DNA of 64,000 nt from Macrostomum lignano (GCA_002269645.1 NIVC01001167.1:248001-312000); one strand, 5' to 3'. Positions 24,132 to 64,000 are shown, numbered from the stretch's first letter. The notes: generated by a model from the letters alone, not told the origin. Translations and numbers: made by a program.

Positions 24132-24149
24132 ATATGAATATGTGCTAGC

Positions 24150-37000: not shown

Positions 37001-38242
37001 TATCTGCCCAGAACACTCTAAACCTCCGGACGGCTAATTAAGACTGGGAAATCCAACTAGATAATTCTTCCGAAAGAACATTATTTACACGTGCTCGATG
37101 CTATCATTCTAAGAATAAATACCTTGCCAAATATTTACCGCTTTTTTGCACCGCATTTTTTCGTGTGTTGTTGTTGTTGTTAGCATACACTTGCCATTCT
37201 GGACATGCTTAGTTGTCATTATTACTCCATATTAGTCATCAGAAATACTATTCATAATAATTTCAACTTGCTTATGTAAGATGCTCGACATTTAGTATAT
37301 CCGGTAATTAATATTTTCTTCTCACTTACCTATACGCATATTCTTAATAATTTCGCATGCTCACAACATTAAGTTTTATATCCAGTATATCGCTGGTAAG
37401 TGCATTAATATTTCCTTGTGTTTAACTAATTTCAAATACTTAAATAAATACAAATAATTAATGTACAAAAGAGGTTTTGCACATTTTGTAGTGAGGGGGA
37501 AATGTAGTAGAGCATTATTTTAGGAGTACAACTAGGCACGAGTTAAATATGCTTTTACGCTACTAACAGTAGTTTCAGCTAGGGGAAATGATTAGAGCAG
37601 GGGTAAAAAGCTAACTTTGGGGTTTCTTTACAACTAAAGAGCAGTTGGGCTCCTTAGAGCAGTTTTTGAGACCAGACTCGGCTCTAAACTCCAAATATTA
37701 ACTGAACTAATTAAATTTTAAATTTTTCATTAATTCAATAGGCTAAAATTTAAGTTTTGAATTTGCAGCAAACCCCTGCTCAGTTTTTCCAAATTATTAT
37801 AAATTTTCCCTAGGCCACCAAAGCTTTCTTCTAAAGTAGCTGAGTGGTCCTAGTTAAATCTCTAAATAACCGAAATTAATACAGAAAAAAGCAAAAAAAT
37901 CCAAAAAAATTAAATTGTAACTATAAAATAAAATACTACATATTATAATCAATTTATTTACCTATAGTCTACTGTAACACATCTAAATTGTTTATTAAAT
38001 TGTTGCCAGCAGCATCCTTGCCTCTTCTTTAATTAAATTTGCTAAACTAGTCATTAGGCAATCCCTTTCTTTCTTCTTGGAGACCGTCTGCGCGCGCGCA
38101 AAATATCTACAAAGCAAAGAATATCCAATTGTGATAAGGTTACAGGACTCTGCTTGCTCACGATTCTGCATCCTAGTTCGAATCTTTGTGCAAAGAACTT
38201 ATAGAATTTATTTTATAGCTAGCAATAATAATAATAGCTGCA

Positions 38243-39705
38243 ATGAGCAAGCAGGTACCACCCTCAAAGATTGCAAAACCATCTGGCCTACCTGCGGCTA
38301 AGCGAGCCGATAATAGATCCTCCGTAGACAAAATGGAGGCGTTCGGCCGTAGCCTGCTTGGTCTAGGCAGAAAATCCGAACGGCCACTTGCCGGTCCTCC
38401 TAGCGCAGCTACGACCTCAGGCGCAGCTGGTGCAGCTATCAAGGAGCCCAATAGTAATAGGGCCTCCAAGACGAGCGCTGATAGCATCCCGCCGGATGCC
38501 CCTTATAGCCTCGCAACCCTTGGCTGCCCAGCTGAAATAGACTGCACCATCGCTCCGCCATCTGATACGCCACCGACGCCCAGAGAACAGGCAAATAAGG
38601 CAACGCCTGAAACCTTGCCGAACAATGCCGAAAAACCTGAGGCGAAACCAAATTATACTGGTGACAATGTGTCTACCATTCCGAAGTCGCCAGTACTTGC
38701 TATCACGGCAAAACAGCAGCACAAGTCACCGGGCAGTGTTGTTTCGATTTCGTCGGACAGCGGCTCCGCGACTGTATTGGAAGGAGCTGGCCAAGCCGGC
38801 TCCGAAGACCCCAATGCAGCCGCATTTGCCCCTGCTTCTGAAGCCTCCGGCGAGGACGATTCGACACGTGCTGCAAACGTCGACCTCGATGCTGAAGATA
38901 ACGACGGGCCCTATGTTGATCCGAATAGCTCGAACAGTCGCGACGCTGTGGAAAATGAAGTCGATGAGGACAACGCCAAGTATCTCCGCAATTCCATCGG
39001 CTTCCCTATTCACCCGGACCGCACCGGTGAAAATATCCAGCGCTACGGCGATGCTGTGCTAGAATACTATCCTAAGCTTATTGAGTCAGTCTCCAAGCAG
39101 CTTTACGACTGCCTCATTGCCGATCTCTTGCCAAAGGCGATCAGGCACCGGCCTCATGAGCAGCGTAAAGTTGTGTGGTTCGGCCCAGGATATTCGTACT
39201 CGGGCGTACCTCTAGAACCAAATGACAAATGGCATCCGGCTGTCGAGGATCTGAGGGATTTCTTAGAATTCAATACAGATCTCGGCATGCCCAAATTTAA
39301 TTCATGCCTAATCAATTTTTACGAGAGCGCCGACGACCAGATACCGTAAGGCGAAATAATGACCAAAGAATAATCGGGCGCTTTCTTACCGAGCCAGGCT
39401 CTGTCATAGTCATGGCAGGCGGATGCCAGCGCCGATGCCAGCACAGCGTCCCGGCTGTGGGCATGCAGGAGGGAGTCCGCATATCGCTCACTTTTCGAGT
39501 GACTGAACCTCCTCGCACAGCCGCACTGGGGCGCGGAGGCCCAACAAGAGCAGCAGCTGCACTCGTCGGAGATGGGCCTGGCAGTGGCCGGGCGGGCACC
39601 AGCCTGGCCGCGCCGGGCTCCCGGACAGCAGCGAATGGGCAGCCAGGAGATCGCGGAGCGGCCGGCGCGTCCGGCTCTGCGGTCCCAGGTGGCCCTCGAG
39701 CCTAG
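38243..39705 (+). pseudogene. ORF1 N-terminal part of copy A with an AlkB domain lacking the HxD segment
   Basis: RKVVWFGPGYSYSG...FNSCLINFY..IP, then a frameshifting deletion, then GSVIVMAGGCQRRCQHSV...RISLTFR. Confidence 0.85.
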
Positions 39706-39768
39706 GGCAACGGCGGCGGCATCGTCGGCGGTGCGGGGCGGGGCGGAAATCGCCAGTCCTATGCTGCA

Positions 39769-41177
39769 ATGGCGGCAACCAACCAGGATGTATCACGGCC
39801 TCCTAATAGGGGAAATAGCAACGTAGTACCCGTGGTGTTTAATACTGCGGCGGAAACTAGCCAAATAGAATTTCTAAAGTGGCTCGCGGCCAACTTTCAA
39901 GGTTCGGCCCGGGCCACACTTACCAAGAAATTGACCCACGAAGTCGGCTTTCTAGTCTTCCCGGCCACTCCACGAGACCACCAACTGTTTCTGCGTGGGC
40001 CTCTGCGTGAGCCCCAGTTCGCTGGGGGGCCGGTGACGAGGCGTCTACCAAAGGCTCGACCGGACCCAAGAGCTAGGCCTGCTGCGCCACGGCGACCAAT
40101 GACCCGAGCGGTCCACTCGTTCGTGGTGCGCGGCGTGCCTCCGGAGGTCGAGGCCAGCGACTTCAAGCGGCATCTACAAGAGAGTGCAGGTCTAAATATA
40201 ATTTCAGCTAGCCGAATAACTGCTAAGCGAGACAATAAGCCTACGTACTTGGTCCGCGTGTTTGTCCGCAACAAGCAGACTGTTGACGCCTGCCTAGCAA
40301 CAGGAATTGTTACGGACTTCATGACCTACCAGTGCGAACCAAACAAGACCGCAGCTCCGGCACGAGCACCGCAGTGTCAAAACTGCCAGCGTTTCGGCCA
40401 TCACGCCCAGCGGTGCAAAGCGGCCAAGCGTTGCAGGATCTGCGCGGCCGAGCACCACTGGCGTGACTGCGACAACCAGGACGCGGTAAAATGTGCCAAT
40501 TGCAATGAGCCGCACAGAGCGAACTACCGCAACTGCCAGGTGGCGATCGACTGCCACAGCGCGGCCCAAAGGCGTGCGGCTGCCTACGCAGCGGGCGCCC
40601 AAGAAGCCGCGGCAGCACAGACAGGTCGACCGCTCCACCACCTATTGCGGCAGCAGCGGCAGAAGCAGCATCAGCATCAGCAGCGGCAGCGGCAGCAGCG
40701 GCGCTACCCGCCCCCGCCCCCGCACCGGCACCAGAACCGGCAGCAGCACCGAGATGGGTCGACGCTGCAGCACGGGCGACAACGGCGACAGGGGGCAACG
40801 ATTCGTTTTGGCTTACCGGCCCTGGCCTCCCTAGCCGGAAGCGCCCTGTGCGCGAATCGACCGACTCGGAGACGCAGACAACTGCGCCGGATGTAACGTC
40901 TAACAATGACACGCCGCCAAGTGCCAGAGAAGTCTCCCAGCTTCAGGGACTGGTGAGTGGGTTCCTTCCCCTCCTGGTCCAAGCACTTGTTGAGGTGCTG
41001 TCGACTCTCTGGCAGAGCCCGGCTAAACGGCCGCCTACTACCGAAAGCTCCCGTCAAACGGTGCAAGACGTAGTAGGTAGGGTTCTGGCCCGGGTCCTCG
41101 AAGGCGAATCGAACAGTCACCAAGGCCTTGGTCAGCTGCTTGGAGCCTCCTGGCGACAGGCGGGTGGCCAGACCTAG
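39769..41177 (+). CDS. Gag-like ORF1 part of copy A (RRM-like region + three Cys/His knuckles)
   Basis: SFVVRGVP, PTYLVRVF, QCQNCQRFGHHAQRC, CRICAAEHHWRDC, CANCNEPHRANYRNC; frameshifted tail. Same frame as 39304-39705, separated by one TAG. Confidence 0.88.
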
Positions 41178-41194
41178 AATAATATAGGATAAAT

Positions 41195-43564
41195 ATGTTC
41201 GGTAATAACGGGCACGATAGCTCGAACCCCACTGCCTCAGGGCTCAAGATCGGTCACCTAAACTGCAGGGGGGTAATACCGAAACTAAAAGAACTCAGGC
41301 TCTGCGTCTCAGACCAGAAATTGGATATTGCGCTGTTTTCTGAGACCATCCTGAAAAATTCCAAGTATGCACTTTCCCGGGCTATGCTGCAGTGCGGTTT
41401 GACCTTCCGATTACGAAGCGCGGACTCCTCCTTGTTCACACCCCACGGGTTAAGGTAGCAGACGTCCAGCTCTCGTACGACAACGTCAACCATGAGGTCC
41501 TTACTTGCACAGTCACTCCTGTTGACGGCGCATGTCCACCTTTCCAACTATCCCTGGTCTATCGGTCCTCGTAGCCGGACAACCTCGACACCGGACTTTT
41601 GACGAGGCTGTCCTCGGCAAAATACTCGCTCATCATGGGAGACCTCAATGCTAGGCACAGCTTCTTGGGGGGTGAAAGTCGCAACAACAGAGCAGGACAG
41701 CAGCTCCATGATTGGCTCTGCGTCGATCCATCCCACCGCCCCACCGTTCTCAACCAACCAGGCCAGTTCACTGGAATAGCCCACCGGCAAGGCGTTGTGT
41801 CCCGGAATGTGCTCGACCTTGGGTTAGCCTCCGGCGACCTCGTCTCACTTGTTCAAGACTTTAAAGTGGGCTCTGACGTGGACAGTGATCACCTCCCAAT
41901 AATACTCACCCTGGCGAGTAACTCCCCAGACTGGCAAGGGCCAGAGAAGGCTCAAAACTTTGCCAAAGCTAACTGGGAAGAGTTCCAAAATTCCTTGATG
42001 GAAAAACTGGTACAAGCGTGGCCTCCAGACCTTAGTACTAGGCAGCAAATTGATGCGGAGGTCGACCTCATCACGAACGCGATCCAGAAAACCATCGAGG
42101 ATAATGTCCCGGTCAGAAACGGCCGTAGAGCCCTCCCCCAGAGGATCATTGCCATGATCAAGGAGAGGAGGAAGCTCCGGCGTCTGTACCACAGTACCAG
42201 GGATGACAATTTTAGGCTGCTCGCGAATAGAAAGGCGAAGGAAATAAAAAGCGCTATTTATTCGTTTGAGCAGGGCCAGTTTACCCAGATGTGCGAGAAA
42301 ATAGTTGAAAAAAGTCAATGCCGGAATGTCAAGGACTTCTGGCAGGACACAAAAAAATTGATGGGGCGCAAAAAGGGCACCACTATTCCGTCCTTGAATG
42401 ATGGCGCCACCCTCGCACATACTGACTCAGACAAAGCTGATATGCTAGCGAGAGCACTAGATGTCAAAATGCGCCCGATTCCATCGACCGATGAGGAGCT
42501 GAAGAAGAGGGTTGAGCAGGCTATGAAGCTCCCCATCTTTAGACCGATTCCCTCGGGCGTAGATCCATCCATGGGCCACCCCCTGGAGGCTCCGTTCTCT
42601 GTTACAGACACCCTCTGGGAGCTGGACCACCTAAAAGTTGACAGTGCTCCGGGCCTAGACAAAGTTCCTAACTGCGTCCTTAAACATGGCCTGGAGCCCA
42701 TTGCGGTTACCCGAATCACTAAACTCTTCAATGATTGCTATCGTACGGGCATCTTCCCATCGCAGTGGAAAAAAAGCGGTGGTGACGATGATTCCTAAAC
42801 CTGACAAACCTCCTGAATCCCCGGGATCCTATCGGCCCATCAGCCTGACCTCCTGCCTCGGCAAGGTGTTCGAGAAGTTATTGGTGAGGAGGCTGATGAA
42901 GCATCTTGAGGGCCAGGGTATCCTCGGCGCGGATCAATGTGCGTACCGGAAGGTCCACTCAACTTATGACAATCTTGTCCGCCTCGTCCAGGACGTCCAG
43001 GTGGGCAAAGCTAAACTAAAAAGGATTCTGGCCATCCTCCTTGACGTACAAGCGGCGTTCGATTCGGTGTGGTATGACTACCTGAGGTTCAGGATGTATG
43101 AAGTCAACACGCCAGACGAAGTCCGGTTCCTTGGCATGAACCTGGACTACCGGCTGACCCTTAACTCGCATGTTGAAAGAGTAGTCAGCCACGGCCGGGC
43201 GCTTGCCCTGTCCATTAACCGCATTGCTAAGCTGACCCGGCTAAGCAGCAATACCCTTAAAATGCTATACAGGGCTTACGTTGAGAGTGCGCTGACTTAC
43301 GGTGCCCCGGTGCTGAACATCATAGCACCCAGTAATCTCAATAAGCTCCAGAAAATCCAAAACTTAGCTCTTAGGATCTGCTATGGCGCCCCTAGTTACA
43401 CCCAGGTAGCCTACCTGCATGAGCTGGCAGCCATGCCTATGATGGCAGACAGGATTCGTTCCCTGGGTGTAGGCTGGCTCTCCAAGGTGAAGGCTGCTGG
43501 GCACCACGATTTCCACATTGAGCCGGAACTCCCTAGAGCTGCCCGCAACCGCCCCCAGTGCTGA
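41195..43564 (+). pseudogene. ORF2 of copy A: AP endonuclease + reverse transcriptase, frameshifted with an internal RT deletion
   Basis: GHLNCRG, FSET, MGDLNARH, VLDLGL, SDHLPII; SYRPISLTSCLGKVFEK, LLDVQAAFDSVW. The sequence jumps from FRMYEVN to EVRFLGMNLD, so the QG and ADD motifs are missing. Confidence 0.9.
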
Positions 43565-44047
43565 ACCTGCTATGGGACAGCCTGAAGAGGAGGCAAGCTA
43601 ATAGACAAGCAGCTGCAAATGCGGCGGCCCGTGCGGCCCAAAACCCGCCCTAGATTTACTAGGTTAGCTGCCCCAAAAGAAAACTTAAAGTGCCCCCAAG
43701 ACAGTGGCTTCCCCTCTCTATTACTCTGGACCTAGCCGTCTGTCAGTGCACAAATAAAAGGTCTAATACAAAAAATAGGCGTGAATAGTAGCGGCAAGTG
43801 CTGGACCAGGCGGGTGGGCCTACGACCCAGTAACAATACAGTAAAAATAGCTGGGCTTACCTGTTGGTACTGCAGGTGATACTGTAATCCGCTGTAGAAC
43901 TCTTCCTGATTCCGCCTCTCTTTACCTTTTTACAATCCAATTATTTTAGACTGCAAATGCTCCTTTCACATCTGGCTTTTGCCTTGTTTATATTTTACTC
44001 TTATTTTTATCCTAACCCAAATATAGTAGTAGTAGTAATAAGTAATT

Positions 44048-44874
44048 CGGCGCCTCAGCCATTGATCAGGCTCTTACGCCACTAGATAAATATAAATTCC
44101 AGGTTGGGAGTGTACTTATGTACACTGAGATCCTAATTGGAGCTAAGAGGACTGTACAAAGGGCAAATGACAAATCAAAAACCTCCCCGGGGGACAGTGA
44201 CAGCGGAACGACATACCAGTCAGGAAGCCCGTGCCCAGAATCCAGGTTAGAGAGACCCCTTGCCTATTAGGGTTGGCCCGAAGGCCTAGAGCCGTGGCTA
44301 CCATGCTGGGGCCGACCGCCCACCACCCCCGGGTACTCAACGAAATGTACATAAACCTCCCCGGGGCCAGAGGGGGAAGAGTGAACCATTCAGGGAAGCC
44401 CGTGCCTTCTCCTGGGTTAGATAAGCCAAAACACCGGTCATAAGACCGCCCCCACGGCCGTGGCCACCCGAAGGAGCCTCCCCCCCAACTAAACCCCGGG
44501 TACTCTTGCCAGACAGTCTCTTATCTTTGAAGCGGCAGGAGGGCTATTCACCGGGACTATTTCACCCTTTGCTTCCCCAACCCGCCATTTTTATAATGAC
44601 CGTGCCAACGGTCTCGTCCTGCTCAGACTCAGTCCTGGTTCTGGCACACTCCAGCTTTAATAGGGTCGCTGGCTGTTCGCTCAGAGGGCACTTGAGGGAG
44701 ACCGTCAAAGCACCAACTGGAACAGGTATAGGCCTGCCTTCCTATACAGCTACCCACAGCCCTTCCCGATCCACCATTACCCACCAACCCGGCCTACTCA
44801 ATCATTACAAGCTCTCAGCCAGGCAGAGACAAGTTTCACGGGGGTACTGCGGTTAGGCGCCTCTATGCGAGACA
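44048..44874 (-). mobile_element. ~830-bp non-coding repeat unit 1, SINE-like, carrying the AlkB-LINE 3' motif
   Basis: Minus strand ends TAGTGGCGTAAGAGCC-loop-GGCTGAGGCGCCG followed by a (TAC)/AT-rich tail; highly similar to unit 2. Confidence 0.6.
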
Positions 44875-44927
44875 AAACCATCCTAACACAAATATAAACT
44901 AAACTACTAAACTAAATAAGTGCTTCC

Positions 44928-45751
44928 GGCGCCTCAGCCATTGAAATAGGCTCTTACGCCACTAGATATAAAAAGTTTCCTGATAGGGAGTGTACTAATG
45001 TACACTAAAAGCCAAGTTAGACTATAGAGGACTGTACAGGGCTGAATCAAAAAAACCAAACCTCCCCGGGGGACAGTGACAGCGGAACGACATACCAGTC
45101 AGGAAGCCCGTGCCCAAAAACCAGGTTAGATAGACCCAAGCATATTAGGGATGGCCCGAAGGCCTAGAGCCGTGGCTACCATGCTGGGGCCGACCGCCCA
45201 CCACCCCCGGGTACAAATCATAAACCTCCCCGAGGCTAGAGGGGGAAGAGAGAACCATTCAGGGAAGCCCGTGCCTTCTCCTGGGTTAGATAGGCCAAAA
45301 CACCGGTCATAAGACCGCCCCCACGGCCGTGGCCACCCGAAGGAGCCTCCCCCCCAACTAAACCCCGGGTACTCTTGCCAGACAGTCTCTTATCTTTGAA
45401 GCGGCAGGAGGGCTATTCGCCGGGACTATTTCACCCTTTGCTTCCCCAACCCGCCATTTTTATAATGACCGTGCCAACGGTCTCGTCCTGCTTAGACTCA
45501 GTCCTGGTTCTGGCACACTCCAGCTTTAATAGGGTCGCTGGCTGTACGCTCAGAGGGCGCCTGAGGGATACCGTCAGAGCACCTTGGTACAGGTATAGGC
45601 CTGCCTTCCTATACAGCTACCCACAGCCCTTCCCGATCCACTATTACCCTCCAACCCAGCCTTCTCACTCATTACAAGCTTTCAGCCAGGCAGAGACAAG
45701 TTTCACAGGAGTGACTGTGGTTAGGCGTCTCTATGCGAGACATGCGAGACA
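44928..45751 (-). mobile_element. ~830-bp non-coding repeat unit 2
   Basis: Direct repeat of unit 1 with scattered differences; its tail (44875-44927) abuts the head of unit 1. Confidence 0.6.
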
Positions 45752-46681
45752 CATAAAATTTTAGTCCTATGTGCCAACCAGGCCAAACCAATATACTTTG
45801 CGTAGGGGCTGCTACTAGTAGTAGTTCCTGCCGCCTAGCTACTATTTTATACTCAAACCAAATGTAAATATTTAAAATACTGACTTTAAAAACCTTCGCG
45901 CTGATCCCCTTTTCGGTCCAAAATATCTTTGTGAGGACCCGTCCCATTTACCGTAGAGCTCCCCCCTTTATCAGTTGCGAACACTTCTTCACTTTTATAT
46001 TCCTAAATGTACATAATCAATTTAAATCGAAATTTTTAACCTTCGTATAACTAATAATTAGCATAATTTTTAAATTTAAATATATCGGCAGAGCCCTACC
46101 CGGGCTGACCCGAGGTGCCTTCAGCACCAATCGTTTAACAACAGAGCAGTCCTTGGTCCGTAGTTGCCTTGGTAACTTAAAATCAATTAAGTAGTGAGCT
46201 ACTACAGGTATCCACAGTGTGGGCCTCGGGTAGCTCTTGCTTAATTGTGCTTAAGCATCTGGGGTGACTGTTAAAGTTGTTATAAGTAATCTTTTATCTT
46301 AAAATAGTCAACTTTATATTTATAGTAAGTGAATCCAAGTTTTCCTTCTAGAATTTTCTATAACAGACTTCTTAATTATATCTATGGTTTTCGACTCCCT
46401 TACATGTACCACTAAGTTTTGTTTGAGCTACGCCAGTGCTCAATTCCATGTTAACCCTTTCTTTTGCTATCTTTCTCAAAACTCAATAAACGCCGATTCA
46501 TTATAATTTAATAAGGCTTTCTTAATAGGTTATGGGCCCTGCGCCCCTCCACTGTGATCTACTGCAGTGTGAACAATAAAGCTGCTTCAGTGGCAGTGCG
46601 TCAGTCGGCGTGATTTTCAGGCTCTACCGTCTCTTAGAAAGTTCAAGCTCAGCAGTCCAGTTGTGCTGGTGGATCGACACG

Positions 46682-51045: not shown

Positions 51046-51616
51046 TATACTATGGTTTTCAACTCCCTTACCTGTACCACTGAGTTTTGTTTGAGCTACG
51101 CCAGTGCTCAATTCCATGTTAACCCTTTCTTTTGCTATCTTTCTCAAAACTCAATAAACGCCGATTCATTATAATTTAATAAGGCTTTCTTAATAGTGAC
51201 TACTCTCCTGGCGTCGGCATCGACCTCGGCAGTGACTTTCGGCGACTTTGGCTTCCGCGGCGACTTCAGCGACTCCGGCCTCGTCAGCGGCTTCTCGGCG
51301 CCTGCAGCCTCGGCGACTTCGACGGCCCGGTGTCTCGGCGGCTCGGCTGGTCGGCAGCTCGGTGACTCGTCAGCGCGGCGCCAGGTGCCTGCAACTGTTC
51401 GGCCAGCCTCGCGCGACGTCTGCAACACGGCGCCAGGTCTACCGGCCTAGTAGATACCAGAGCATAGCATCGTTTTAAAGACTTTTCTTGCACTCTCTAG
51501 AATTGGCTCTACTTTAAGTAGTATCATTTGATTTTTAAAGTTTTACTAGTTTTAGTTTTAAATAGTTTTATTAGGCCTACCGCTTTTCTTGAATTTAGTA
51601 CTGTCAGTAGTAATCC

Positions 51617-52867
51617 ATGGAAGTAGAGACCCAGAACAAACGCTCATCTCGCGACACCGACTCGCCACCGGTTGTCACGGCGACGAAAAAGGCAAACAAT
51701 CGCTCGTCCTCTGGTCCTGGACGAGCGTCCAACTCTGCTCCGACGGCAAGCAGCGTGCCAGCATGCGCCAAGCTAGAAGAAGAACCTCCAGCAGTCAGCA
51801 GTCGGGATGTTCAAGCCCCAGCACCCTCGTCTGAGGCCAGATCCAGGCTGTCCATCGCGGCGAGTCATCCTCTGCCTCCTGACGAAAATGACGCGCCTTC
51901 AGGTGAGACCTCCCCGGGGTCGGGCTCTGGCACTGGTTCTAAAACGGTTCAAATAAATAAGACTGGTGAACAAATTCTAAATCTAGGACACAATCATGGC
52001 CAGCTTAGGTACCTACCTCAGGCCTTAGCTAAAATTGAGAACGATCTCACTAACATTATTATGAAAGAAATTCATCCTGCCGCGTTTCACCACCAAACAA
52101 ACGGGCGACCTGAAATGAGAAAAGTAGTTTGGTTTGGGCCACCGTACTCTTACAGAAATGGCCAGCTTGACAGAAATGATCAATGGCACCCAGAGTTTAT
52201 CAAACTAGTCACCTGGCTCCACGTTGAACTGGGATTACCACTCTTCAACTCCTGTCTTATCAACTTCTATGAAGATGGTAACACGACTATTCCATGGCAC
52301 GCCGACAACGAACCTGAGCTTGGAGTCAACCCTACTATAGCCTCTATCTCGTTAGGTGCTCCAAGAGAGTTTGTAGTCAGGGCCAACACCTCAAAGAATA
52401 TTGTGTTCAAACAACACCTGGCCAGCGGCAGCGTTCTCATTATGAGTGGCTCAACCCAGCAGCACTTCCAACATTGCATCACGAAGGACCCAAAGGTAAA
52501 AAATATGAGAATCGACTTAACTTTCCGAACAACTCAAGACCCGGCACCGATAACGCCGCACTTCAATCCTTGCGTGCGTCCAGCAGATGATGCCATTGAA
52601 CAGCAGCCAATCACCTGTGACCTAGACAATGAAGAGTCAATTCACCTAAAAGCTCAAGAAGAAAAAGCCAACTTTGAACGCATTAGACAATTAAGCCAAT
52701 CCAGCACTAGTTCTTATCGCCAGCACAATCAATCTAACAACCAAACTAAAGCTAAGGGGTCTGCACCGGTACTTTTCGAAGTCGCCCTAGAAGGGAAGGA
52801 CCCCATCCAATTCGAACGGTTGCTCAAGACCAATTTTCCTAACATCAGGGTCAAATCTGTCAAATAA
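51617..52867 (+). CDS. alkB: ORF1 N-terminus of copy B with an intact AlkB-family 2OG-Fe(II) dioxygenase domain (~52106-52528)
   Basis: RKVVWFGPPYSY, FNSCLINFYEDG, WHADNE (HxD), IASISLGAPREF, LASGSVLIMSG..QHC (His), RIDLTFR (Rx5R). Symbol is family-level only. Confidence 0.93.
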   Translation: MEVETQNKRSSRDTDSPPVVTATKKANNRSSSGPGRASNSAPTASSVPACAKLEEEPPAVSSRDVQAPAPSSEARSRLSIAASHPLPPDENDAPSGETSPGSGSGTGSKTVQINKTGEQILNLGHNHGQLRYLPQALAKIENDLTNIIMKEIHPAAFHHQTNGRPEMRKVVWFGPPYSYRNGQLDRNDQWHPEFIKLVTWLHVELGLPLFNSCLINFYEDGNTTIPWHADNEPELGVNPTIASISLGAPREFVVRANTSKNIVFKQHLASGSVLIMSGSTQQHFQHCITKDPKVKNMRIDLTFRTTQDPAPITPHFNPCVRPADDAIEQQPITCDLDNEESIHLKAQEEKANFERIRQLSQSSTSSYRQHNQSNNQTKAKGSAPVLFEVALEGKDPIQFERLLKTNFPNIRVKSVK

Positions 52868-54115
52868 TTGTGCCATTCATCTGGTTACATAAAAATTCCT
52901 GAACATCCTAAAGACTTCAATGTACTCCTAAATGGGCCGCTTAAAGTAGACTCCATCAATGGGCATGAAGTTACTCGCAGACTTGCCTCCAAACGACCAA
53001 CCCGTCAAGGCGATGATCGATCACAAATTCGAGGACCTCTCAAGGCACCAAATTTACACTCATTCATAGTAAAAATGTAAAAAAAATGCGGTTGATGTCA
53101 GCGGCCTAGCGAAACACCTCTCGGAGGGTGACCAGCAGCTTCCAATTGATGGGGCTGTCCGCATCTACTCGAAGGCTACTGGTCAAGCTACCCCCTTTGT
53201 CCGCCTCTTCACTAAATGCCGTGGCGCCATGGACCACTGCATTGAACATGGCATCTACCTTGGACTGTTCCGGTACCGCTGTGAAGCCTCAACCAGCCTC
53301 CCACCAGTCAAAGCGATTCAATGCAAACGTTGCCAAGGCTTTGTTCACCTCGAGACTCGATGCACATCTGGTTTCAAGTGCAACAAATGTGCTCAAGACC
53401 ACTACTCTGGCGATTGTCCAAAGGAGCACAAGTTCAAGTGCGCAAATTGCGAAGGAGAGCACCCGGCTTATTCCTACAAATGCCCAATGGTCAAGAAGGC
53501 CAACGAAGCTGCTACAAGTAAAGAACACGAGCGCATTAACAACTTAAAACTAAAACAAAAACGAAAAAAAAATTTCCGGAATAACCAGTTGCCATTTGGG
53601 AGCCAGACCCTTGGGGAGGTTTTCGGCGTTCCAGGTCCGCAGTCCTATGCCGAGATGTTGCGTCCCAACCCAAACCAGCTCTGCCATCCATGGGTCCAAT
53701 TGCCTACTCCAACCGAGCTGCTCAGGCTTTCATCTCGGCCTCGGCTCAGCCTGCTGACTCTCTCGCTGCCGCCGCTGCCAACCATCAAGCGCTGCTAGGT
53801 GCAACCAATCCATCTGAGTTCACAACAGCTGCTCCAGCCAATCCGGTCTCGACGCAATCTGGAGTTGATTCTACTAATCAATCAGGACCATGTGAGAGGG
53901 GCCTTTTCTCTCGGGAAGACGTGCTCGAGGTTGCGTTGCTGGCGCTTGACCGACTCATGAGCATAGAACCAGGACGGATGTTCACCCCCTGGGAGGCGGG
54001 GCAACTTGTCTTCCGGGTGGTGTCTAAAGTCGTAAGGGTGTTCAGGAATCAGAGAGTGCCTGTTGCAGAGTCAGGGGACACCAAAGTCGCGCAAGCGAAC
54101 GGAGGTGGAACCTGA
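52868..54115 (+). pseudogene. Gag-like remainder of ORF1 of copy B
   Basis: In frame with the AlkB ORF across one TAA. HEVTRRL and HSFIVK align with copy A; knuckles CKRCQGFVHLETRC, CNKCAQDHYSGDC, CANCEGEHPAYSYKC; frameshifts present. Confidence 0.85.
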
Positions 54116-54204
54116 ACTCTCTGATTATAAGTTGCTTAGCTTAGTTCAATATATTCAATTCTACTCGTAAAACTCCTACGACAAATACCAAAAGTCACTC
54201 CGTT

Positions 54205-56980
54205 GTGCGGGACTTCCTCAACATTGGGCATCTGAACTGTAACTGGCTCAGCAACAAAATCTATGAAATAATTTCATGGCTAAATAATGAGGACTTAGAT
54301 ATAGGACTATTCTCCGAAACTGGCTTAGTTGATACAAACCCTTTCTTTGTTCAAGACTACGCTATCCTTAGGTTTGACAAACCTCACTGTAGAAGAGGAC
54401 TTGCCGTAGCTTATAAAAATAATCCTAACATTATGAATATTAAAAAGTTTTATGACAACAGTCACCATGAATACATTAGTTTTGAGGTTTTCTTAAAGCA
54501 TAACAGGTTGAACAAGCTTAATATAGTCCTCTTCTACAGGGCTCCCAACCCCACCAGGCTAAACTGTGACATTTTAAACAAACTTTTCTCTAATCCCTCC
54601 ACCCTGGTCATTGGGGACTTTAATTGTAACCATCTTGCCCTTAGTGGAGATTCCAATTATAATTACCCTGGCAGACAGCTCTTTGACTGGCTAGAAGAGC
54701 ACCCCAACCCCCCATCTTACTAAACAACTATGGTGAGTTCACCAGAGTGTGCAATCGTGGCGGCTCCCACACTGCGAACGTGCTGGACTTGGGGCTTTGC
54801 TCTCCCAACCTTGGCGCCCACACCAGAGAGGTCCTTATAGGGGACGACTTGGACAGTGACCACTTCCCCATCATTATTAAAGTCTACCTTGACCCAAACA
54901 GTAAAATATCGAAAAAAACCCAAAAGTTTTTGGAGCACTGACTGGGAGACCTTCAGGGTGGTTCTTCAAGACAAGCTCAGTGACAATCAAATCAGCAATC
55001 TTAGGTTAGCTACTCCAGGTGAATTAGATCGAGCTGAAGATCTGTTAACTCAGAGTCTGAATGACACGATTGAGGAGGTGGTCCCAAACAGGGACCCCCG
55101 CGAGCAGCTCCCTCCCGACATAATAGCCAAGATTAAGTACAGGAGAAAACTTGGGAAGCTTTTTAGGAATACCCGAATAGATAATTTTAGGATTCAGACG
55201 AATCAAGCTGCCAAGGAGATCAGGCTAGCCATTCGTGTGCACAGGTCAAGAAAGTTTGAAAACTTATGTGAAAAAATTTCCAAGACCAGTTACCGTAAAG
55301 AACCAAGAAAATTCTGGGTTGACATAAAAAAAATGATAAGTGAGGGTCCCAAACCCATCACCTACCCCCCGATTGTTCTCAAAGACTGTCGCTGATACTG
55401 AAGCTGAGAAAGCTCAGGCCTTCAAAGAATTCCTCGAGGCTCAGATGCGTCCCTGCCCAGATAGATCCACCCAGCTGTACAAAAAGATTGAGGCCCAAAA
55501 AGATCTTGAGATCTACAAACCTCATAACAACATCTTAGCTGCGTTAGCCTATCATAAAGACCATGCTGATCCCGATAATCCGGACAAAGAAGACGTAGAA
55601 GCTGATATCCTTAATATCATAGATCAGGATGTTCTATGGGAAAGCAGGAAGCTCAGGGCAGGGGGGGGGCTCCTGGGCCTGACAAGATACCGAATGTTGT
55701 CCTCAAATTTAGCCTGAGTCCAGACTCCATCAGGGTGCTTGCGAAAATCTTTAATGCTAGTTTCCTCCTTGGATACTTCCCCAAGCGATGGAAAATGGCC
55801 ACTGTCAAAATGATATCCAAACCTAATAAGCCAAAAAATCTCAATGCTTATTATTAGCCTTACCTCTTGTTTAGGTAAACTTTATGAGAAAATCTTAGCA
55901 AGGAACCTTCGGGTTATCTTAGAAAATCTAGGGATCATTAATGACGAGCAATGTGCCTATATGTATGATCATAGTACCTACGATAATATTGTTCGACTTA
56001 CTGACGATGTGCTAAAAATGCTCCAGCTGAAACAGTACACGTTGGGGGTCTTTTTTGACGTAAAGGGAGCCTTTGATGGGGTCTGGCACAACTACCTTAA
56101 ATTCAAAACTCGAAAGTGTGGAGTCCCGCACAACATGACCAGAATCTTAGCAAATTATCTTGACGATAGAACTGTCGAGATTGTAGTAGCTGGAGCTCAA
56201 AGTGCAGGGTTCCAGCCAAAAGCAGGTGTCCCCCAGGGGGGTGTCCTTTCGCCCCTACTATTTATTATTTATGTCAGCTCTATACCAAAACCGACAGATA
56301 ATAAAGTTAAAATTAGTCAGTTCGCTGATGACTTGGCGGTCTGGGCATGTGCAAGAAAATCTACCATGTCTGCTAAAAGACTCAACGACTACTTCATCCG
56401 TCTCAAAAGGTGGCTTGATGCTGTTGGTATCACTATTAATGCCTCAAAAAGTAAAGCAATCTCCTTCTTCAAGGCGAACGGCAACAAAACAGGCCCTGGT
56501 GAACCCCTAATCAAACTTGGGAACAACAGAATTAGTTATTATGACACTGTCACCTTTCTTAGCATGGTCCTAGACAAACAACTTAACTACAAACCTCACG
56601 TCGACAAGGTCGTAGGTACTACCACAAAAAAGATTGCTGCGCTAGACAGAATGGTTAAAAATTCCAGAATTTCCCAACTCGGACTACGACTGATCTATGG
56701 GTCTTACATTGAAAGTACCATCGCTTACGGTGCTCCAATTCTTCTTAATCTTTCCGACTTCCAGGTCAATAGAAATCAGGTGCTCCAAAACAAGGCTCTG
56801 CGTATCATCCTTGACGCTCCACCCTACATCAAAATTTCCTACATTCACTTGGTCACTAACATGCCCATGATCAAAGATCGCCTGCTCAGCCTGGGGAAAA
56901 AATGGTTCAAAAAAGCGTTAGAAAGCGGTATACATAATTTTAAAGAAGACACTAAAGAATGGTCGAGACCCGGCTTTTGA
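54205..56980 (+). pseudogene. ORF2 of copy B: AP endonuclease + reverse transcriptase, no RNase H; frameshifted
   Basis: GHLNCN, FSETG, IGDFNCNH, VLDLGL, SDHFPII; ISLTSCLGKLYEK, FDVKGAFDGVWH, GVPQGGVLSPLLF, QFADDLAVW, FLSMVLD. Confidence 0.92.
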
Positions 56981-58569
56981 GTCCCGGTCACAACCGTTCT
57001 CAGGAAAAAACTTAATGCCTAAATTATAGCCAGATTCTTGGCTATAAGACTAATATTGTGCCCTTTTTGTTGGGGATTGATCTGTCGACCCTCTTCTATT
57101 TGTTAATTTTTGAAATTATAAAACAAAAAATTTTGCCGTACAACGGGACGGCTCCTGAGGTTATAACCTGCCTTCCTAGGGGTACTAGCATGGGATATGC
57201 ATGCTATGCTGCATAGCCCTCTCTATCCACAGCTCCCTCAGGACGGGAGACGTTTTAAACCTGGAACCCCAAACCAGGTGGACCAATAGGCCCTTAACTC
57301 TGACTGAGTGAGCCGCTTTGGATTGGATTTGGGGTTTGGATTGCTATTTATAGCTTCAAAAAATTTGACATGACAGCTATGGAAACTTCGTTTTCGTAGC
57401 AGTAGTATGATTTGAATTTGACCATTAATATTGATTATTCTTAGGAATGATCGATTAAATTTTGACTCGAGCACCTCTCTCCGGGAGAGAGTCCAAACTT
57501 TACTGCTGGCTTTGATTCCAATCAGTTGACCAAATCTTAATGCGACTATCTTCCACTTAAAGTATTAGTCATCAAATCAAATATTTTTCAAATATTGCTA
57601 AACGTTTCACTTTTATTCTTTCCAAATTGCTAAAATTCTTTTATTCTGTTTATATTTAGCTCAAATATTTTCTTTGTGATTTCTTTACTTTGTTTTTACT
57701 CCTAATCTTGAAATTTTCATTTCAGTTTTAGTTTTATCTCACTTTCTTTATCTCTTGTTTTACTCTTGCTCTTATCTTTTCTATCTTTTATACTCGTATT
57801 ATTTGTTATATAGCTACCCCCAAATATTTGTTTTATGTAAATATTTCCTCGTTTTTTACTTTTCCTAAATTGGACGTTCATAATCTAATAATTTGGAACA
57901 CAAAAATACATAGTCGCGCAAGAGCCCTTCAAAGGGCTGAGGCGCAGGGCAATTCTATTTTATATTAGCCCCTACCTATCAAGTAAGTAAGTAAGTCCTT
58001 AGAGCAGTCCTTGGCTTTTTTGGAAAGTTAAGAAATTGCTGTGCTTTAGACACCACAGGTATCTACAGTGTAGGCCTACAGGTGTTTACTGTGCAGTATA
58101 TTGACAAGCTTTCTGGGAAACCCACGTTACCTGGCGTCTTCGGCTTCTGCGGCGATCAACGGGTTCTGCAGCTTCTCCGGCCTCGGCGACTGCTCTTCAG
58201 CGACTTCGGCATCGTCGGCGGCGTCTGCGGCGGCCAGCTTCGACGGCAGCATCGGCGCCTGCGGCTTCGGCGGTTCGACGGCTGGGCCGGGCTCAGCGGC
58301 GGCGGGTGCGCGGCTCTTCAGCGGCGACGGCACGGCACCAGGCACCTTGCGCGGCATCAACACGGCGCCAGACCCGCTCGTCTTATAGAAACTAGGACCT
58401 ATTATCAGTTGTAGACTTTATCTTGCATTTAGTTGACTATAGACTACTGACAGTAGGTCAATTAGCATTTTCTTATAGTTTATTAATTAAGTTTTAAGTT
58501 TTAAGTTTTAATTAGCCTACCGTTTTAAGGCTTTATCTTGTATATTAATCTTATTAACAATTTATTTAA

Positions 58570-59752
58570 ATGGAAATTGAGACTAATAGTAAGAGGGCAC
58601 GTGAAACCGACTCGCCACCGGTCACTAAAAAAGCCAACAACCGTACTTCAACTGGCACCGACCGGTCTGTTGCTGCGTCGTCCATTCAAGCGTCGTCTCG
58701 TATGCAGCATCAGCACACTCTTGACGAAGAACCTTCGGTCGGCGTCCAGGATGGTGAGCCCAGGCCTGTTCTGAAAGAGTCACATTTCTCAATCTCAAAG
58801 CCAGACTTATCAGATGACAAAACTTACAAACCAGTTCCAAACTGCAAGATCAGATATATCCCTAATGAAGGCTAATGAGGCTAAACTCACCAAAATCCTC
58901 ATGGAGGAGGTATACCCGCTGTCCTTCCACCATCAAACTGGGGGTAGACCGGAAGCTAGGAGGGTGGTCTGGTATGGGCCAGAATACACCTACGGTGGTA
59001 GCAAGCTTGAAAGTAACGACGACTGGAACCCGGTTGTCACGCACCTTGCCACATGGTTGTGTATCGAGCTCAATCCGCCATTAGCAAATTCCTGTCTCAT
59101 TAATTTCTACAAAGACGGGTCAGTAGCCATCCCATGGCACTCAGACAACGAGCCGGAGCTAGGAGATGACCCGACAATAGTGTCAGTGTCATTAGGTGCC
59201 CAGAGAGATTTTCAGCTCAGGACAAAGGGCATGAGTCAGAACGTTGTCTTTTCGCAGAAGCTGGCTAGCGGCAGTGTAACAGTAATGAGTGGGGCCACGC
59301 AACGGTACCTTCAGCACTCTATCGCCAAAGACCTGAAAGTCAAAGATTTTAGAGTTAATCTTGCATTCAGAATCACTAAGGATCCCAGAATTGAGAACTC
59401 ACCAGCTCATACACCTGCATCAGCCAATCCTTGCGTCCGTCCGACTGACGACTCCATCACCTGCCACCTTGACGATGAAGAGTCGGTACGGCGCAGGGGT
59501 AGGCAGGACGCAGAAAACATGCAAAAGATTAGTTCACGCTCCAGCAGCAGCTGTAGGCTTAACTCTAAAACTAATCGAACCAATCAGGACACTCAAGCAC
59601 AAACAGCCAATCAGCGATCACAGCAGACTACTCAGCAATCCACTAAGCAATCTAAACCTAGCACTCAGCAGCCTCACTCAGCCAATCAGCACTCAGGCAC
59701 TCAGCAGCCAGCCACTCAGCCTAACACTAAGCAGTCAAACGCAGCCAATTAG
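58570..59752 (+). CDS. alkB: ORF1 N-terminus of copy C with an intact AlkB domain (~58945-59370); one upstream frameshift
   Basis: RRVVWYGPEYTY, NSCLINFYKDG, WHSDNE, IVSVSLGAQRDF, LASGSVTVMSG..LQHSI, RVNLAFR. Symbol is family-level only. Confidence 0.92.
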
Positions 59753-60085
59753 CACACACAATAAGGCACTCAGTAACATTCGTCAAACACTCAGCAGTCA
59801 CATTCAGCCAATCAGCAATCAGGCACACAGCAGCCAGCCACTCAACCCAGCACTCAGCAGGCACAAGCAGCTCTGCAATCACAAGCAACTAAACCAGCTA
59901 ATCAGACTCAGCAGCAAGCTTCCACTCAGGGAGTAAACTCAGGCAATCAGCAGTCAGCACCAAGAATTCACACTCAACCACCCAACAGCTACCAACTACC
60001 TGCAACTCAGCAATCAAACATTCACACACAGCAGTCACAAGCACGCACTCAACAGTCAGCCACACAACAACCTAACAATTCTTCT
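59590..60085. repeat. Degenerate short repeats (cactcagcag / gccaatcag)
   Basis: Visible low-complexity expansion downstream of the AlkB domain of copy C. Confidence 0.8.
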
Positions 60086-60739
60086 TGATGTGGCCGCAGC
60101 CTTCTGCTGCAAGCATAGGGCCGCAGTCACATCTTAGGCACTCTGTCCGCTGCTAGCATCTGGAATAGGAATTTTCTGCTGCCTCCATGCACTCTAAGCA
60201 GCCTTACTTGGCGCTCAGAAGTTGCACAATATGGCGCAAGCGAGCCGTTGTATGAGGCTCAATAGCATAGGAAATTAGGAAGTTTTGCCTAGCCTAGGGT
60301 TAGTTAGTGTAAGCCGCCAAATTTGGCACTTGCCTGTACTGTTGTTGCCTGGCCTGCCGCGTACAATCGCTCAGTGTACGCAAGTCTAGTTAGCCGCACT
60401 CCTCCCCCGTGCGCTCTCTGGCAGAGCACATTCCCAGGCTGGCCATGCAGTCCACTAAACAAAAAATCTAGTCAGGTGGCTCCACCGTGGCTCCACCTTG
60501 GCTAGCCCTTGCACCCGTGGACTCGGGGATCCAATGAGTGAGTCTGACAGTTTCCCACGCTAAAAATAGCTTGTTAACGGGACCCAGCCGGGCGGCTGTG
60601 GAGAAGCAGACGCCAGAACTTGACTCGTATTGGTTGGCAAGATACATGGCACTAATTCAAAAAAAGAAAAAAAACTTTTTTGGCTTTTATTGCGTGAGCA
60701 TTAATAGCATTGACCTTGCCAAGGCGCTAAAATGGGCGC

Positions 60740-61110
60740 CCAAAGGCTGAAATTGGCGCCGGTATATTAAAATCGGCGCAAAAAAGTAGCAAGCTGATAT
60801 ATGCTGCCACTTCTACGCCCGTTGGCACATTCCAGCGCTGATTCGGCGATCCTGGCGCCAATTTGGGGATCCTGGCGCCAAATTTAGCTTCCGGCGCCAC
60901 TTCGAGCTCTCCCGCGCCAATTTGAGCTTTCCAGCGCTAGTTTGAGCTTTCTAGGGCTAGTTTGGGTCCTCTCGAGCTGATTTCAGCATTTTGGCGCTGA
61001 TTCAGCGATCCTGGCGCCAATTTGGGGATCCTGGCGCCAAATTTAGCTTCCGGCGCCAATTCGAGCTTTCCCGCGCCAATTTGAGCTTTCCAGCGCTAGT
61101 TTGAGCTTTC
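60740..61110. repeat. GGCGCC-rich repeat with a ~110-150-bp direct duplication
   Basis: gctgattcggcgatcctggcgccaatttggggatcctggcgccaaatttagcttccggcgcc occurs at ~60837 and ~60997. Confidence 0.85.
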
Positions 61111-61127
61111 CAGGTGCGCAGCACCCC

Positions 61128-63995: not shown

Positions 63996-64000
63996 AAATC

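What the first reader, a model, noticed from the sequence alone, without database searches (positions are those of the whole stretch)
37652..60085. Head-to-tail array of the AlkB-LINEs with flush junctions
Seen: the 3' hairpin and short AAC tail of A end at 46142, immediately before the AGAGCAGTCCTTGG head of B. The (AAGT)4 tail of B ends at 57996, immediately before CCTTAGAGCAGTCCTTGG, the head of C. CCTTAGAGCAGT also occurs at ~37652, upstream of A. The copies are different subfamilies, so this is not a simple tandem duplication. Established: head-to-tail arrays of Jockey-clade elements are known from Drosophila HeT-A/TART/TAHRE, and sequence-specific APE LINEs (R1, Tx1, TRAS/SART) stack at their targets. 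Inference: this family targets the conserved 5' end of its own relatives, a self-targeting safe-harbour strategy that builds arrays.
Basis: partly seen in the sequence, partly recalled or inferred. Interest (0 to 1): 0.8.

Follow-up and report, generated by a model that had tools for sequence, protein, structure and literature searches.

The report
LINEs stacked in one target site
Three divergent copies of a flatworm LINE retrotransposon lie head-to-tail because each inserted into the same short host target, which is duplicated at every insertion. The shared 'head' is that duplicated target, not the element's own 5' end.

Summary
Three AlkB-carrying, APE-type LINEs lie head-to-tail on the + strand: A 37664-46142, B 46157-57996 and C 58015-~60085. 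They share only 33-51% amino-acid identity.

The interpretation (self-targeting of the family's own 5' end) is not supported. The 'head' CCTTAGAGCAGTCCTTGG is an 18-bp target-site duplication flanking B. A sits inside its left copy with its own 8-bp duplication, AGAGCAGT.

Three Macrostomum lignano loci holding a close relative of B ('Mlig-1') settle this:
- LINE-borne homology starts just after the 18-mer.
- In L008, Mlig-1 has a 21-23-bp duplication. Its 5' flank is 84% identical to the window's flank, and the homology stops exactly at the insertion point (…AGAGCAGTTGGGCT^). That flank is probably the LTR region of a Gypsy element.
- In two rDNA units (L007, L009), Mlig-1 sits at -17/+4 of the spliced-leader RNA gene with a 21-bp duplication. 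In L009 an A-type copy is stacked in the same gene.

So this is a site-specific LINE family. Its arrays arise by repeated insertion into a target that each insertion regenerates, as with R1 tandems. It is a new variant of a known kind. The spliced-leader gene target for an APE-type LINE is the most interesting part.

The parts
37503..37651 (+). Left half of the host target ('site 2'). It is an LTR-like repeat that starts TGTAGTAG and ends ...AGAGCAGTTGGGCT. The AGAGCAG-containing stretches at 37592 and 37638 are native to this repeat, not insertion scars.
   Evidence: 83.6% identical to L008:9331-9440 (E 1e-22). The alignment from TGTAGTAG to GGGCTC has 81% mean column identity and stops at the insertion point. 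In L008 gag, RT and integrase of a Gypsy-type element follow downstream.
37652..37663 (+). Left part of copy 1 of the 18-bp target-site duplication of B (CCTTAGAGCAGT). Positions 37656-37663 (AGAGCAGT) are the left copy of A's own 8-bp duplication.
   Evidence: Joining 37652-37663 to 46151-46156 gives CCTTAGAGCAGTCCTTGG, identical to 57997-58014.
37664..46142 (+). Element A (8.5 kb), the most divergent subfamily.
- 5' UTR 37664-38242.
- ORF1 with a frameshifted AlkB domain, 38243-39513, plus a C-terminal part 39706-40893.
- ORF2 (APE and RT, frameshifted), about 41183-43561.
- Internal 0.87-kb tandem duplication, 44037-44874 / 44915-45742 (91% identical).
- 3' hairpins 46085-46113 and 46114-46128.
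- Tail ...GTTTAACAAC.
   Evidence: Pfam. tblastn and blastp against B. Self-BLAST. Folding. An A-type 3' end (GGCAGAGCCC..GGGCTGA..GTTTAACAAC) also lies in the M. lignano spliced-leader gene.
46143..46156 (+). Right copy of A's 8-bp duplication (46143-46150, AGAGCAGT), followed by the rest of copy 1 of B's 18-bp duplication (46151-46156, CCTTGG).
46157..57996 (+). Element B, full length at its 5' end (TCCGTAGTTGCC...).
- Conserved 5' hairpin, about 46196-46236.
- 5' UTR interrupted by a foreign insertion, 46269-51196.
- ORF1 51617-52867 (intact AlkB), continuing in other frames to about 53795 (RRM/CCHC-like region).
- ORF2 (APE 54145-54720, RT 55814-56977), with multiple frameshifts.
- 3' hairpin 57916-57945.
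- Tail (AAGT)4, 57981-57996.
   Evidence: Pfam. Colinear with Mlig-1: 5' UTR 77% nucleotide identity, ORF1 47% and RT 61% amino-acid identity. Hairpins with compensatory changes.
46269..51196 (+). Later insertion in B's 5' UTR. It consists of 107 bp of AT-rich DNA plus a Copia-type LTR retrotransposon (46376-51196) with 153-bp LTRs 97% identical. Gag, a beta-barrel domain and integrase are present; no RT was detected. The insertion is flanked by a TGACT direct repeat.
   Evidence: Self-BLAST. Pfam. The alignment with the Mlig-1 5' UTR shows B resuming at GTGACTAC.
57997..58014 (+). Copy 2 of the 18-bp target-site duplication of B (CCTTAGAGCAGTCCTTGG). It lies directly in front of C's 5' end.
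58015..60085 (+). Element C, a 5' fragment only.
- 5' end is within about 5 nt of full length.
- 5' hairpin, about 58047-58088.
- ORF1 N-terminus 58570-58872 and AlkB 58775-59749.
- A Q/S-rich tail runs to about 60085.
- No RRM/CCHC region, ORF2 or 3' end is present in the window.
   Evidence: Pfam. tblastn. 5' UTR homology to B and Mlig-1. Sequence.

Best explanation
A, B and C belong to a sequence-specific, APE-type LINE family whose ORF1 carries an AlkB domain. Each copy entered the same short host target by target-primed reverse transcription.

Shown:
- The endonuclease of B-type elements nicks the bottom strand right after ...AGAGCAGTTGGGCT, and the top strand about 18-22 nt downstream. 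Each insertion is therefore flanked by a duplicate of that stretch. In the window the duplicate is CCTTAGAGCAGTCCTTGG.
- This duplication restores the target next to the element's 5' end. A further insertion then lands flush against the head of the earlier one. B and C are two such events, and their relative order cannot be told.
- A belongs to a different subfamily. It nicked 4 nt further in and made an 8-bp duplication (AGAGCAGT) inside the left copy of the 18-mer, so A arrived after B.
- In M. lignano the same family uses a second multi-copy target: the 5' end of the spliced-leader (SL) RNA gene in the rDNA spacer, at -17/+4 relative to the published SL start.

Inferred:
- The window's target is part of a Gypsy-type LTR element.
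- Full-length copies in the SL gene may be transcribed from the SL promoter. B carries CCGT, the first four SL bases, in front of its 5' end even though it sits at a non-SL site.
For: 1. TSD structure. A is flanked by AGAGCAGT on both sides (37656-63 and 46143-50). B, once A and one AGAGCAGT are removed, is flanked by a perfect 18-mer.

2. Homologue Mlig-1, found through P0102, P0155 and P0154. It is 99.7-99.8% identical at three M. lignano loci. ORF1 and ORF2 are intact in L007 and L008, the two loci examined. It has the same 5' and 3' hairpins, with compensatory changes.

3. Homology between B and Mlig-1 starts at CCGT(A/C)GTTGCC, directly after the 18-mer.

4. L008. There is a 21-23-bp direct repeat, CTTGGGAAAGAAAGCCTTTCG(T), around Mlig-1. 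Its 5' flank is 83.6% identical to window 37543-37652 (E 1e-22) and ends at the same base, GGGCT^. Gag, RT and integrase of an LTR element lie downstream.

5. L007 and L009. A perfect 21-bp repeat, GTGTGAATAGCTCTTCGCCGT, flanks Mlig-1. The right-hand copy runs into CCGTAAAGACGGTCTCTTACTGCGAAGACTCAATTTATTGCATG|GTAAG. This is the published M. lignano spliced leader (PMC5173321). It lies between U1 snRNA and 18S in the rDNA unit.

6. L009 also has a 5'-truncated A-type LINE stacked in the same SL gene, with a 14-15-bp duplication AAGACGGTCTCTTA. This is an independent head-to-tail stack in another assembly.

7. Precedent. Tandem R1 elements separated by duplicated target arise by double insertion (PMC5932611).
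Against: - The right-hand flank of C is not in the window, so the downstream half of the target and C's own duplication are unseen.
- The LTR identity of 'site 2' rests on one locus (L008), and no second LTR copy was seen.
- The two targets (SL gene and site 2) show no significant sequence similarity. What the endonuclease recognises is therefore unknown.
- Only four loci were examined, and L007 and L009 may descend from one insertion spread by rDNA homogenisation.
- A's first bases, TTTTGA, differ from the CCTTGG end of the 18-mer only by transitions. The alternative parse, in which A carries its own diverged 'head', is therefore not formally excluded for A.
Confidence: 0.8

Rival explanations
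1. Self-targeting. The 14-18-mer is the conserved 5' end of the family's RNA, and the endonuclease targets that head in resident copies. Arrays then grow without any host target.
For: - The 18-mer is identical in front of B and C, although their UTRs are only about 68% identical.
- A is preceded by AGAGCAGT followed by TTTTGA, which differs from CCTTGG only by transitions.
- Self-targeting LINEs are reported elsewhere: Zepp (PMC8226300) and Cnl1 (PMC12810828).
Against: - Mlig-1, whose 5' UTR is colinear with B's, has no such head. At that position it carries its own local target duplicate.
- The right-hand duplicates in L007 and L008 are followed by non-LINE DNA.
- The window's flank homology with L008 shows the site is a host or LTR repeat.
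- An 18/18 identity is trivially explained by a target-site duplication.
Confidence: 0.06
2. One insertion event with end-to-end template jumping. The reverse transcriptase copied C RNA to its 5' end, jumped to the 3' end of B RNA and then to A RNA. This would make one chimeric cDNA with flush junctions.
For:
- The downstream copies are full length at their 5' ends.
- The 3' hairpin is conserved, so cross-recognition between subfamilies is conceivable.
Against: - It would need more than 20 kb of cDNA from three different full-length RNAs.
- It does not explain the nested direct repeats (8 bp around A, 18 bp around B), or why CCTT appears twice at junctions.
- It does not explain why B's junction lies at the same homologous base as an independent insertion in L008.
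Confidence: 0.04
3. Hybrid reading. Part of the 18-mer (for example the final CCTTGG) is C's own 5' end. B's duplication then spans the junction of target and C, so the head of a resident element contributes to the site that is re-used.
For: MAFFT can align C's CCTTGG with CCGTAG in B and CCGTCG in Mlig-1. Microhomology (CGT) is seen at both kinds of Mlig-1 5' junction.
Against: C's distance from the 18-mer to the 5' hairpin (32 nt) is already close to that of Mlig-1 (about 35 nt) and B (39 nt). This fits a 5' end at about 58015. The alignment is short and ambiguous.
Confidence: 0.07
4. Artefact or local rearrangement: assembly mis-join at a short repeat, or unequal crossing-over or tandem duplication followed by divergence.
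For: The region is repeat-rich, and all copies are degenerate.
Against: - An 18-bp repeat is too short to mis-join long-read contigs.
- The copies are 33-51% identical in protein, and B has an intact 416-aa AlkB ORF. They therefore diverged as active elements, not in place.
- A comparable stack exists in an independent public assembly (L009).
Confidence: 0.03

Closest known systems
R1 (and R2) rDNA-specific LINEs, and R1 tandem arrays formed by double insertion
   Same: - APE-type (R1), sequence-specific insertion into a multi-copy target.
- The target-site duplication restores the target, so a second insertion gives head-to-tail elements separated by duplicated target (PMC5932611).
- The M. 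lignano copies also live in the rDNA unit, and an R2-site insertion sits in the 28S gene of the same unit.
   Different: - The target is not 28S. It is the SL RNA gene in the spacer and a site in an LTR-like repeat.
- The stack here is made of three divergent subfamilies, not copies of one element.
- ORF1 carries an AlkB domain.
- Clade membership was not tested.
Spliced-leader-gene-specific LINEs: NeSL-1 (nematodes) and CRE/SLACS/CZAR (trypanosomatids)
   Same: They insert at a fixed position at the 5' end of SL RNA genes, a multi-copy target. PMC4640811 lists spliced-leader exons among LINE targets. Possible use of the SL promoter is an inference here; that SLACS does so is my recollection.
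   Different: Those lineages encode a restriction-like endonuclease and are early-branching. This family has an N-terminal APE endonuclease. PMC4640811 states that reported target-specific APE LINEs fall in the Tx1 and R1 clades.
Tx1-clade LINEs that target other transposons or small-RNA genes (Tx1L in Tx1D, Keno, Mutsu)
   Same: APE-type LINEs with specific insertion into another mobile element or a small-RNA gene. 'Transposons' are listed as LINE targets in PMC4640811.
   Different: No evidence of Tx1-clade membership. Here there are two unrelated targets for near-identical copies (99.8% identical in L007 and L008).
Self-targeting or nesting LINEs: Zepp (Chlorella, Coccomyxa) and Cnl1 (Cryptococcus)
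   Same: Clusters and arrays of same-orientation LINE copies.
   Different: Zepp and Cnl1 are reported to insert into copies of themselves, giving mostly 3' fragments. Here the target is host or LTR sequence outside the element, and the downstream copies keep complete 5' ends.
Drosophila HeT-A/TART/TAHRE telomeric arrays
   Same: Head-to-tail, same-orientation arrays of different LINE families.
   Different: The telomeric elements add to chromosome ends without target-site duplications and with variably eroded 5' ends. Here there are nested duplications, junctions precise to the base, no telomeric repeats and TE-rich DNA on both sides.

Membership tests
APE-type LINE (non-LTR retrotransposon) | ORF2 with an N-terminal AP-endonuclease domain followed by reverse transcriptase | tested here: met
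   Exo_endo_phos_2 and RVT_1 are found in A and B. Both are intact in Mlig-1 ORF2, 950 aa.
APE-type LINE (non-LTR retrotransposon) | Target-site duplications flanking individual copies; no LTRs; 3' end is a short simple repeat or A-rich tail | tested here: met
   Duplications of 8 bp (A), 18 bp (B), 21-23 bp (Mlig-1) and 14-15 bp (A-type copy in L009). Tails are AAC repeats, (AAGT)4 and (AAATG)n.
Sequence-specific (target-specific) LINE | Independent insertions at the same nucleotide position of homologous target copies | tested here: met
   B in the window and Mlig-1 in L008 both follow ...AGAGCAGTTGGGCT^ in flanks that are 84% identical. Mlig-1 and an A-type element both sit in the first ~20 nt of the SL RNA gene.
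Sequence-specific (target-specific) LINE | Most genomic copies reside in the target | not testable with these tools
   Only four loci could be fetched. No flatworm genome can be searched by DNA here.
   The 18-mer is absent from the 5' end of the colinear relative Mlig-1. At that position each copy has a duplicate of its local flank. The right-hand duplicates abut the SL gene or Gypsy-type DNA.
Telomeric LINE array (HeT-A/TART type) | Terminal position, addition to chromosome ends without target-site duplications, variable 5' erosion | tested here: not met
   Nested duplications are present and the junctions are precise. There are no telomeric arrays in the window. 37 kb of other TEs lie upstream.
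SL-gene-specific LINEs of the NeSL/CRE group | Restriction-like (PD-(D/E)xK) endonuclease C-terminal to the RT | tested here: not met
   ORF2 has an N-terminal APE domain, and Pfam finds nothing beyond the RT. Only the choice of target is shared.
   No reference LINE library was available. The best named database hits are generic 'transposon BS/jockey-like' proteins at 27% identity. PDB searches gave only L1 and R2 RT matches and no informative APE match.

The most novel reading that the evidence does not exclude
This would be an undescribed APE-type LINE lineage of macrostomid flatworms with an AlkB domain in ORF1. Its primary niche is the 5' end of the spliced-leader RNA gene in the rDNA spacer (insertion at -17/+4). 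There it is placed directly behind the SL promoter and may be transcribed from the SL start site: B carries CCGT, the first four SL bases, at a non-SL locus. A fixed site in a Gypsy-type LTR element would be a second multi-copy harbour. It would be the first SL-gene-targeting LINE with an AP endonuclease. It would also be a case of one element (copies 99.8% identical) using two unrelated specific targets.
Probability: 0.4. Interest if true: 0.7.

Novelty: new variant of a known kind. Interest (0 to 1): 0.55.

Why it matters
The finding turns a puzzling 'self-homing' array into a testable case of target-specific retrotransposition. It matters for four reasons.

- Target-specific APE LINEs are reported mainly from the R1 and Tx1 clades (PMC4640811). 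SL-gene targeting is known for the restriction-like-endonuclease lineages NeSL, CRE, SLACS and CZAR (my own knowledge; PMC4640811 itself names only NeSL as spliced-leader-specific).
- An APE LINE doing the same in a flatworm would be convergent evolution of the SL-gene niche.
- Two different specific targets for near-identical copies bear on how APE endonucleases and 5'-end joining set specificity.
- Apparently intact copies (both ORFs open) sit in a transgenesis-capable model, M. lignano, so experiments are possible. These could also address what the AlkB domain in ORF1 does.

For annotation, the lesson is that a perfectly conserved 'head' shared by divergent LINE copies may be a target-site duplication.

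Tried and rejected
- **Head as a known RNA.** I tested for a ribozyme, snRNA or SL RNA. Rfam gave no hit at gathering score in the window. Only chance-level hits (E 0.4-9) came up around the three junctions. There are no tRNAs.
- **Head as a trans-spliced leader.** Rejected. The M. lignano SL is absent from the window. The B/C homology continues into a structured 5' UTR.
- **External copies by DNA pattern.** One metagenome scan gave a single chance hit in an unrelated coding sequence (L006).
- **RT relatives from ENA contigs (L001, L002, L004, L005) and the AlkB-ORF1 hit L003.** They are 33-42% identical in RT. L001, L002, L004 and L005 show no AlkB match; L003 is a distant AlkB-bearing LINE. 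None has the head motif or head-to-tail neighbours. They were uninformative.
- **P0151.** It is a cellular AlkB fusion in a protist, not a LINE.
- **AGAGCAG stubs at 37592 and 37638 as scars of tiny earlier insertions.** Rejected, because the homologous L008 flank has the same stretches.
- **The 18-mer or 'site 2' as a diverged SL gene.** Local alignments are not better than shuffles, p 0.2-0.95.
- **Clade assignment through solved structures.** No informative APE match.
- **Window's own proteins.** The one tried (B's AlkB ORF1) is not on record in the contig collection, so the source assembly could not be fetched.

Full report
**Observation**

The quoted junctions are exact.
- A's 3' end consists of two hairpins and the tail ...GTTTAACAAC. 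It stops at 46142, and AGAGCAGTCCTTGG begins at 46143.
- B's (AAGT)4 tail is 57981-57996. It is followed by CCTTAGAGCAGTCCTTGG at 57997-58014.
- CCTTAGAGCAGT also lies at 37652-37663, 580 nt upstream of A's ORF1.
- The 14-mer occurs only at these two junctions in 64 kb. For the 12-mer, 0.21 matches with up to one mismatch are expected by chance.

**Anatomy**

All three copies are APE-type LINEs whose ORF1 carries a 2OG-Fe(II) oxygenase (AlkB) domain (Pfam).
- A is 37664-46142. It has frameshifted ORFs and an internal 0.87-kb tandem duplication.
- B is 46157-57996. Its 5' UTR is split by a 4.9-kb insertion (46269-51196) that contains a Copia-type element with 153-bp LTRs.
- C (58015-~60085) is only a 5' UTR plus the AlkB part of ORF1.
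- The copies are 33-51% identical in protein and share no nucleotide similarity except the B/C 5' UTRs. Tandem duplication is therefore excluded.
- B and C share a structured 5' hairpin (core CACAGGTATCYACAGTGTRGGCCT). A and B share a 3' stem-loop (AGAGCCC...GGGCT).

**First doubts**

Removing A together with one copy of AGAGCAGT (37656-63 or 46143-50) restores CCTTAGAGCAGTCCTTGG to the left of B. That is identical to the 18-mer on B's right. This is the classical signature of target-site duplications (TSDs): 8 bp for A and 18 bp for B. It explains why 18/18 bases are identical while the adjoining UTRs are only about 68% alike. From the window alone, a TSD could not be separated from a conserved element 'head'.

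**Related loci**

- B's AlkB ORF1, the one window protein looked up, is not on record in the contig collection.
- A profile of the AlkB ORF1s (A4) found a Macrostomum lignano protein, P0102, and through its cluster P0155 and P0154.
- Their loci L007, L008 and L009 (assembly GCA_002269645.1) each hold the same 7.1-kb LINE, which I call 'Mlig-1'. The copies are 99.7-99.8% identical. ORF1 (938 aa, AlkB) and ORF2 (950 aa, APE+RT) are intact in L007 and L008, the two loci examined.
- Mlig-1 is colinear with B. The 5' UTR is 77% identical in nucleotides; ORF1 is 47% and RT 61% identical in amino acids.
- Both hairpins are conserved with compensatory changes: 6 of 21 pairs in the 5' hairpin and 2 of 9 pairs in the 3' hairpin.

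**What the M. lignano loci show**

(a) The homology between B and Mlig-1 begins at CCGT(A/C)GTTGCC(T/A)TGGTAAC. In B this is base 46158, directly after the 18-mer plus one T. Upstream of that point each copy carries a different sequence.

(b) In L008, Mlig-1 (9462-16581) is flanked by a 21-23-bp direct repeat, CTTGGGAAAGAAAGCCTTTCG(T).
- Its 5' flank, L008:9331-9440, is 83.6% identical to window 37543-37652 (E 1e-22).
- Seen by eye and with MAFFT, the homology starts at TGTAGTAG (window 37503). It ends exactly at ...AGAGCAGTTGGGCT^, the base after which both B's left duplicate and the Mlig-1 duplicate begin.
- Two different elements therefore entered homologous copies of one repeat at the same nucleotide.
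- In L008, gag/CCHC, RT and integrase follow about 0.85 kb downstream. The integrase stretch is 93.5% identical to a Gypsy-type integrase fragment at window 32817-33031. 'Site 2' is therefore probably in or just after the LTR of a Gypsy-type element (inference).

(c) L007 and L009 are rDNA units: 5.8S, 28S, U1 snRNA..., 18S (Rfam).
- There Mlig-1 is flanked by a perfect 21-bp repeat, GTGTGAATAGCTCTTCGCCGT.
- The right-hand copy continues as CCGTAAAGACGGTCTCTTACTGCGAAGACTCAATTTATTGCATG|GTAAG.
- This is the published M. lignano trans-spliced leader (PMC5173321).
- The LINE therefore sits at -17/+4 of the SL RNA gene.

(d) In L009 the SL exon is interrupted again, 15-19 nt further in, by a 5'-truncated LINE. 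Its 3' end (GGCAGAGCCCACCCAGGGCTGATCCG...GTTTAACAACAACA) is of the window-A type. It is flanked by AAGACGGTCTCTTA. That is a second, independent head-to-tail stack of two subfamilies in one target.

**Interpretation**

The family is sequence-specific, and the 'head' is duplicated target.
- B-type elements nick the bottom strand after GGGCT and the top strand 18-22 nt downstream. The duplication restores the site next to the new element's 5' end.
- The next insertion therefore abuts that 5' end. This is the 'double insertion' route known for R1 tandems (PMC5932611).
- B and C are two such events, and their order is open because either copy of the duplicate could have been re-used.
- A came after B, since it splits B's left duplicate.
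- A-type elements seem to nick at ^ARRRCRGT: AGAGCAGT in the window and AAGACGGT in the SL exon. This rests on two sites and is a weak inference.

The two targets show no significant similarity, so the recognition determinants are unknown.

B carries CCGT, the first four SL bases, in front of AGTTGCC at a non-SL site. Both kinds of Mlig-1 5' junction share CGT with their targets. This fits either of two readings. One is transcription of SL-resident masters from the SL start site. The other is microhomology-guided 5' joining. I regard promoter capture as plausible but unproven.

**Rivals**

- Self-targeting fails the test in (a)-(c).
- A single event with template jumping does not explain the nested duplicates or the shared insertion base with L008.
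- An assembly artefact or local duplication is unlikely, given the divergence of the copies and the L009 stack in another assembly.

**Source organism**

Other repeats in the window match L008 at 93-97%. The window therefore comes from M. lignano or a very close relative (inference).

**Comparison and novelty**

Functionally this is R1/R2-like niche targeting, and NeSL/SLACS-like in its choice of the SL gene. It differs in having an AP endonuclease and an AlkB-bearing ORF1. PMC4640811 places reported target-specific APE LINEs in the R1 and Tx1 clades. I found no report of an SL-gene LINE in Macrostomum or of AlkB in a LINE ORF1 in the held literature. Repbase could not be consulted, and the clade was not determined.

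Verdict: observation confirmed, interpretation partly supported, and a new variant of a known kind.

Noticed in passing
L007:9441-16660, L009:8994-16600: In M. lignano the SL RNA gene lies in the rDNA spacer between U1 snRNA and 18S. It is occupied by an AlkB-LINE whose two ORFs are open in L007. The repeat period in L007 (21,212 bp) includes the LINE, so LINE-bearing units may be tandemly propagated.
   Followed up: partly
L007:3052-5829: The 28S gene of this rDNA unit carries a 2.78-kb insertion exactly at the canonical R2 site (CTCTTAAG|...|TAGCCAAATGCCTCGTCATC), with weak RT-like matches at 3570-4136. The 28S gene in L009 is uninterrupted.
   Followed up: partly
window 38219-39513, 51617-52867, 58775-59749; After the flatworm LINE proteins, the nearest relatives of the LINE AlkB domain are bacterial AlkB proteins of about 200 aa (42-56% identity over the domain). 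This hints at horizontal acquisition. A distant LINE with AlkB in ORF1 also exists in an ENA contig (L003).
   Followed up: no
window 10750-60085: All eight retroelement-derived coding regions with Pfam hits are on the + strand: LINE RT 11480-13234, tyrosine-recombinase element 16698-17606, RT plus two RNase H ORFs 22254-25198, Gypsy integrase 32744-33369, A, Copia, B and C. This bias could fit a unistrand piRNA-type cluster or a long intron.
   Followed up: no
window 41683-41695: The 13-mer AACAACAGAGCAG, identical to the A|B junction (46137-46149), also occurs inside A's ORF2. It may be chance (expected about 1e-3 per window), but it is unexplained.
   Followed up: no
window 44037-45742: A's 3' region contains an 0.87-kb tandem duplication, 91% identical. 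It may predate or postdate the insertion.
   Followed up: no
window 23044-25198: A different LINE has two consecutive RNase H-like ORFs that are 30% identical to each other.
   Followed up: no
window 60085-64000: Downstream of the truncated C there are unclassified repeats: 20-mer and 14-mer tandem arrays, the latter also in inverted orientation at 62277-62382, and a TC-rich array. Whatever truncated C was not identified.
   Followed up: no
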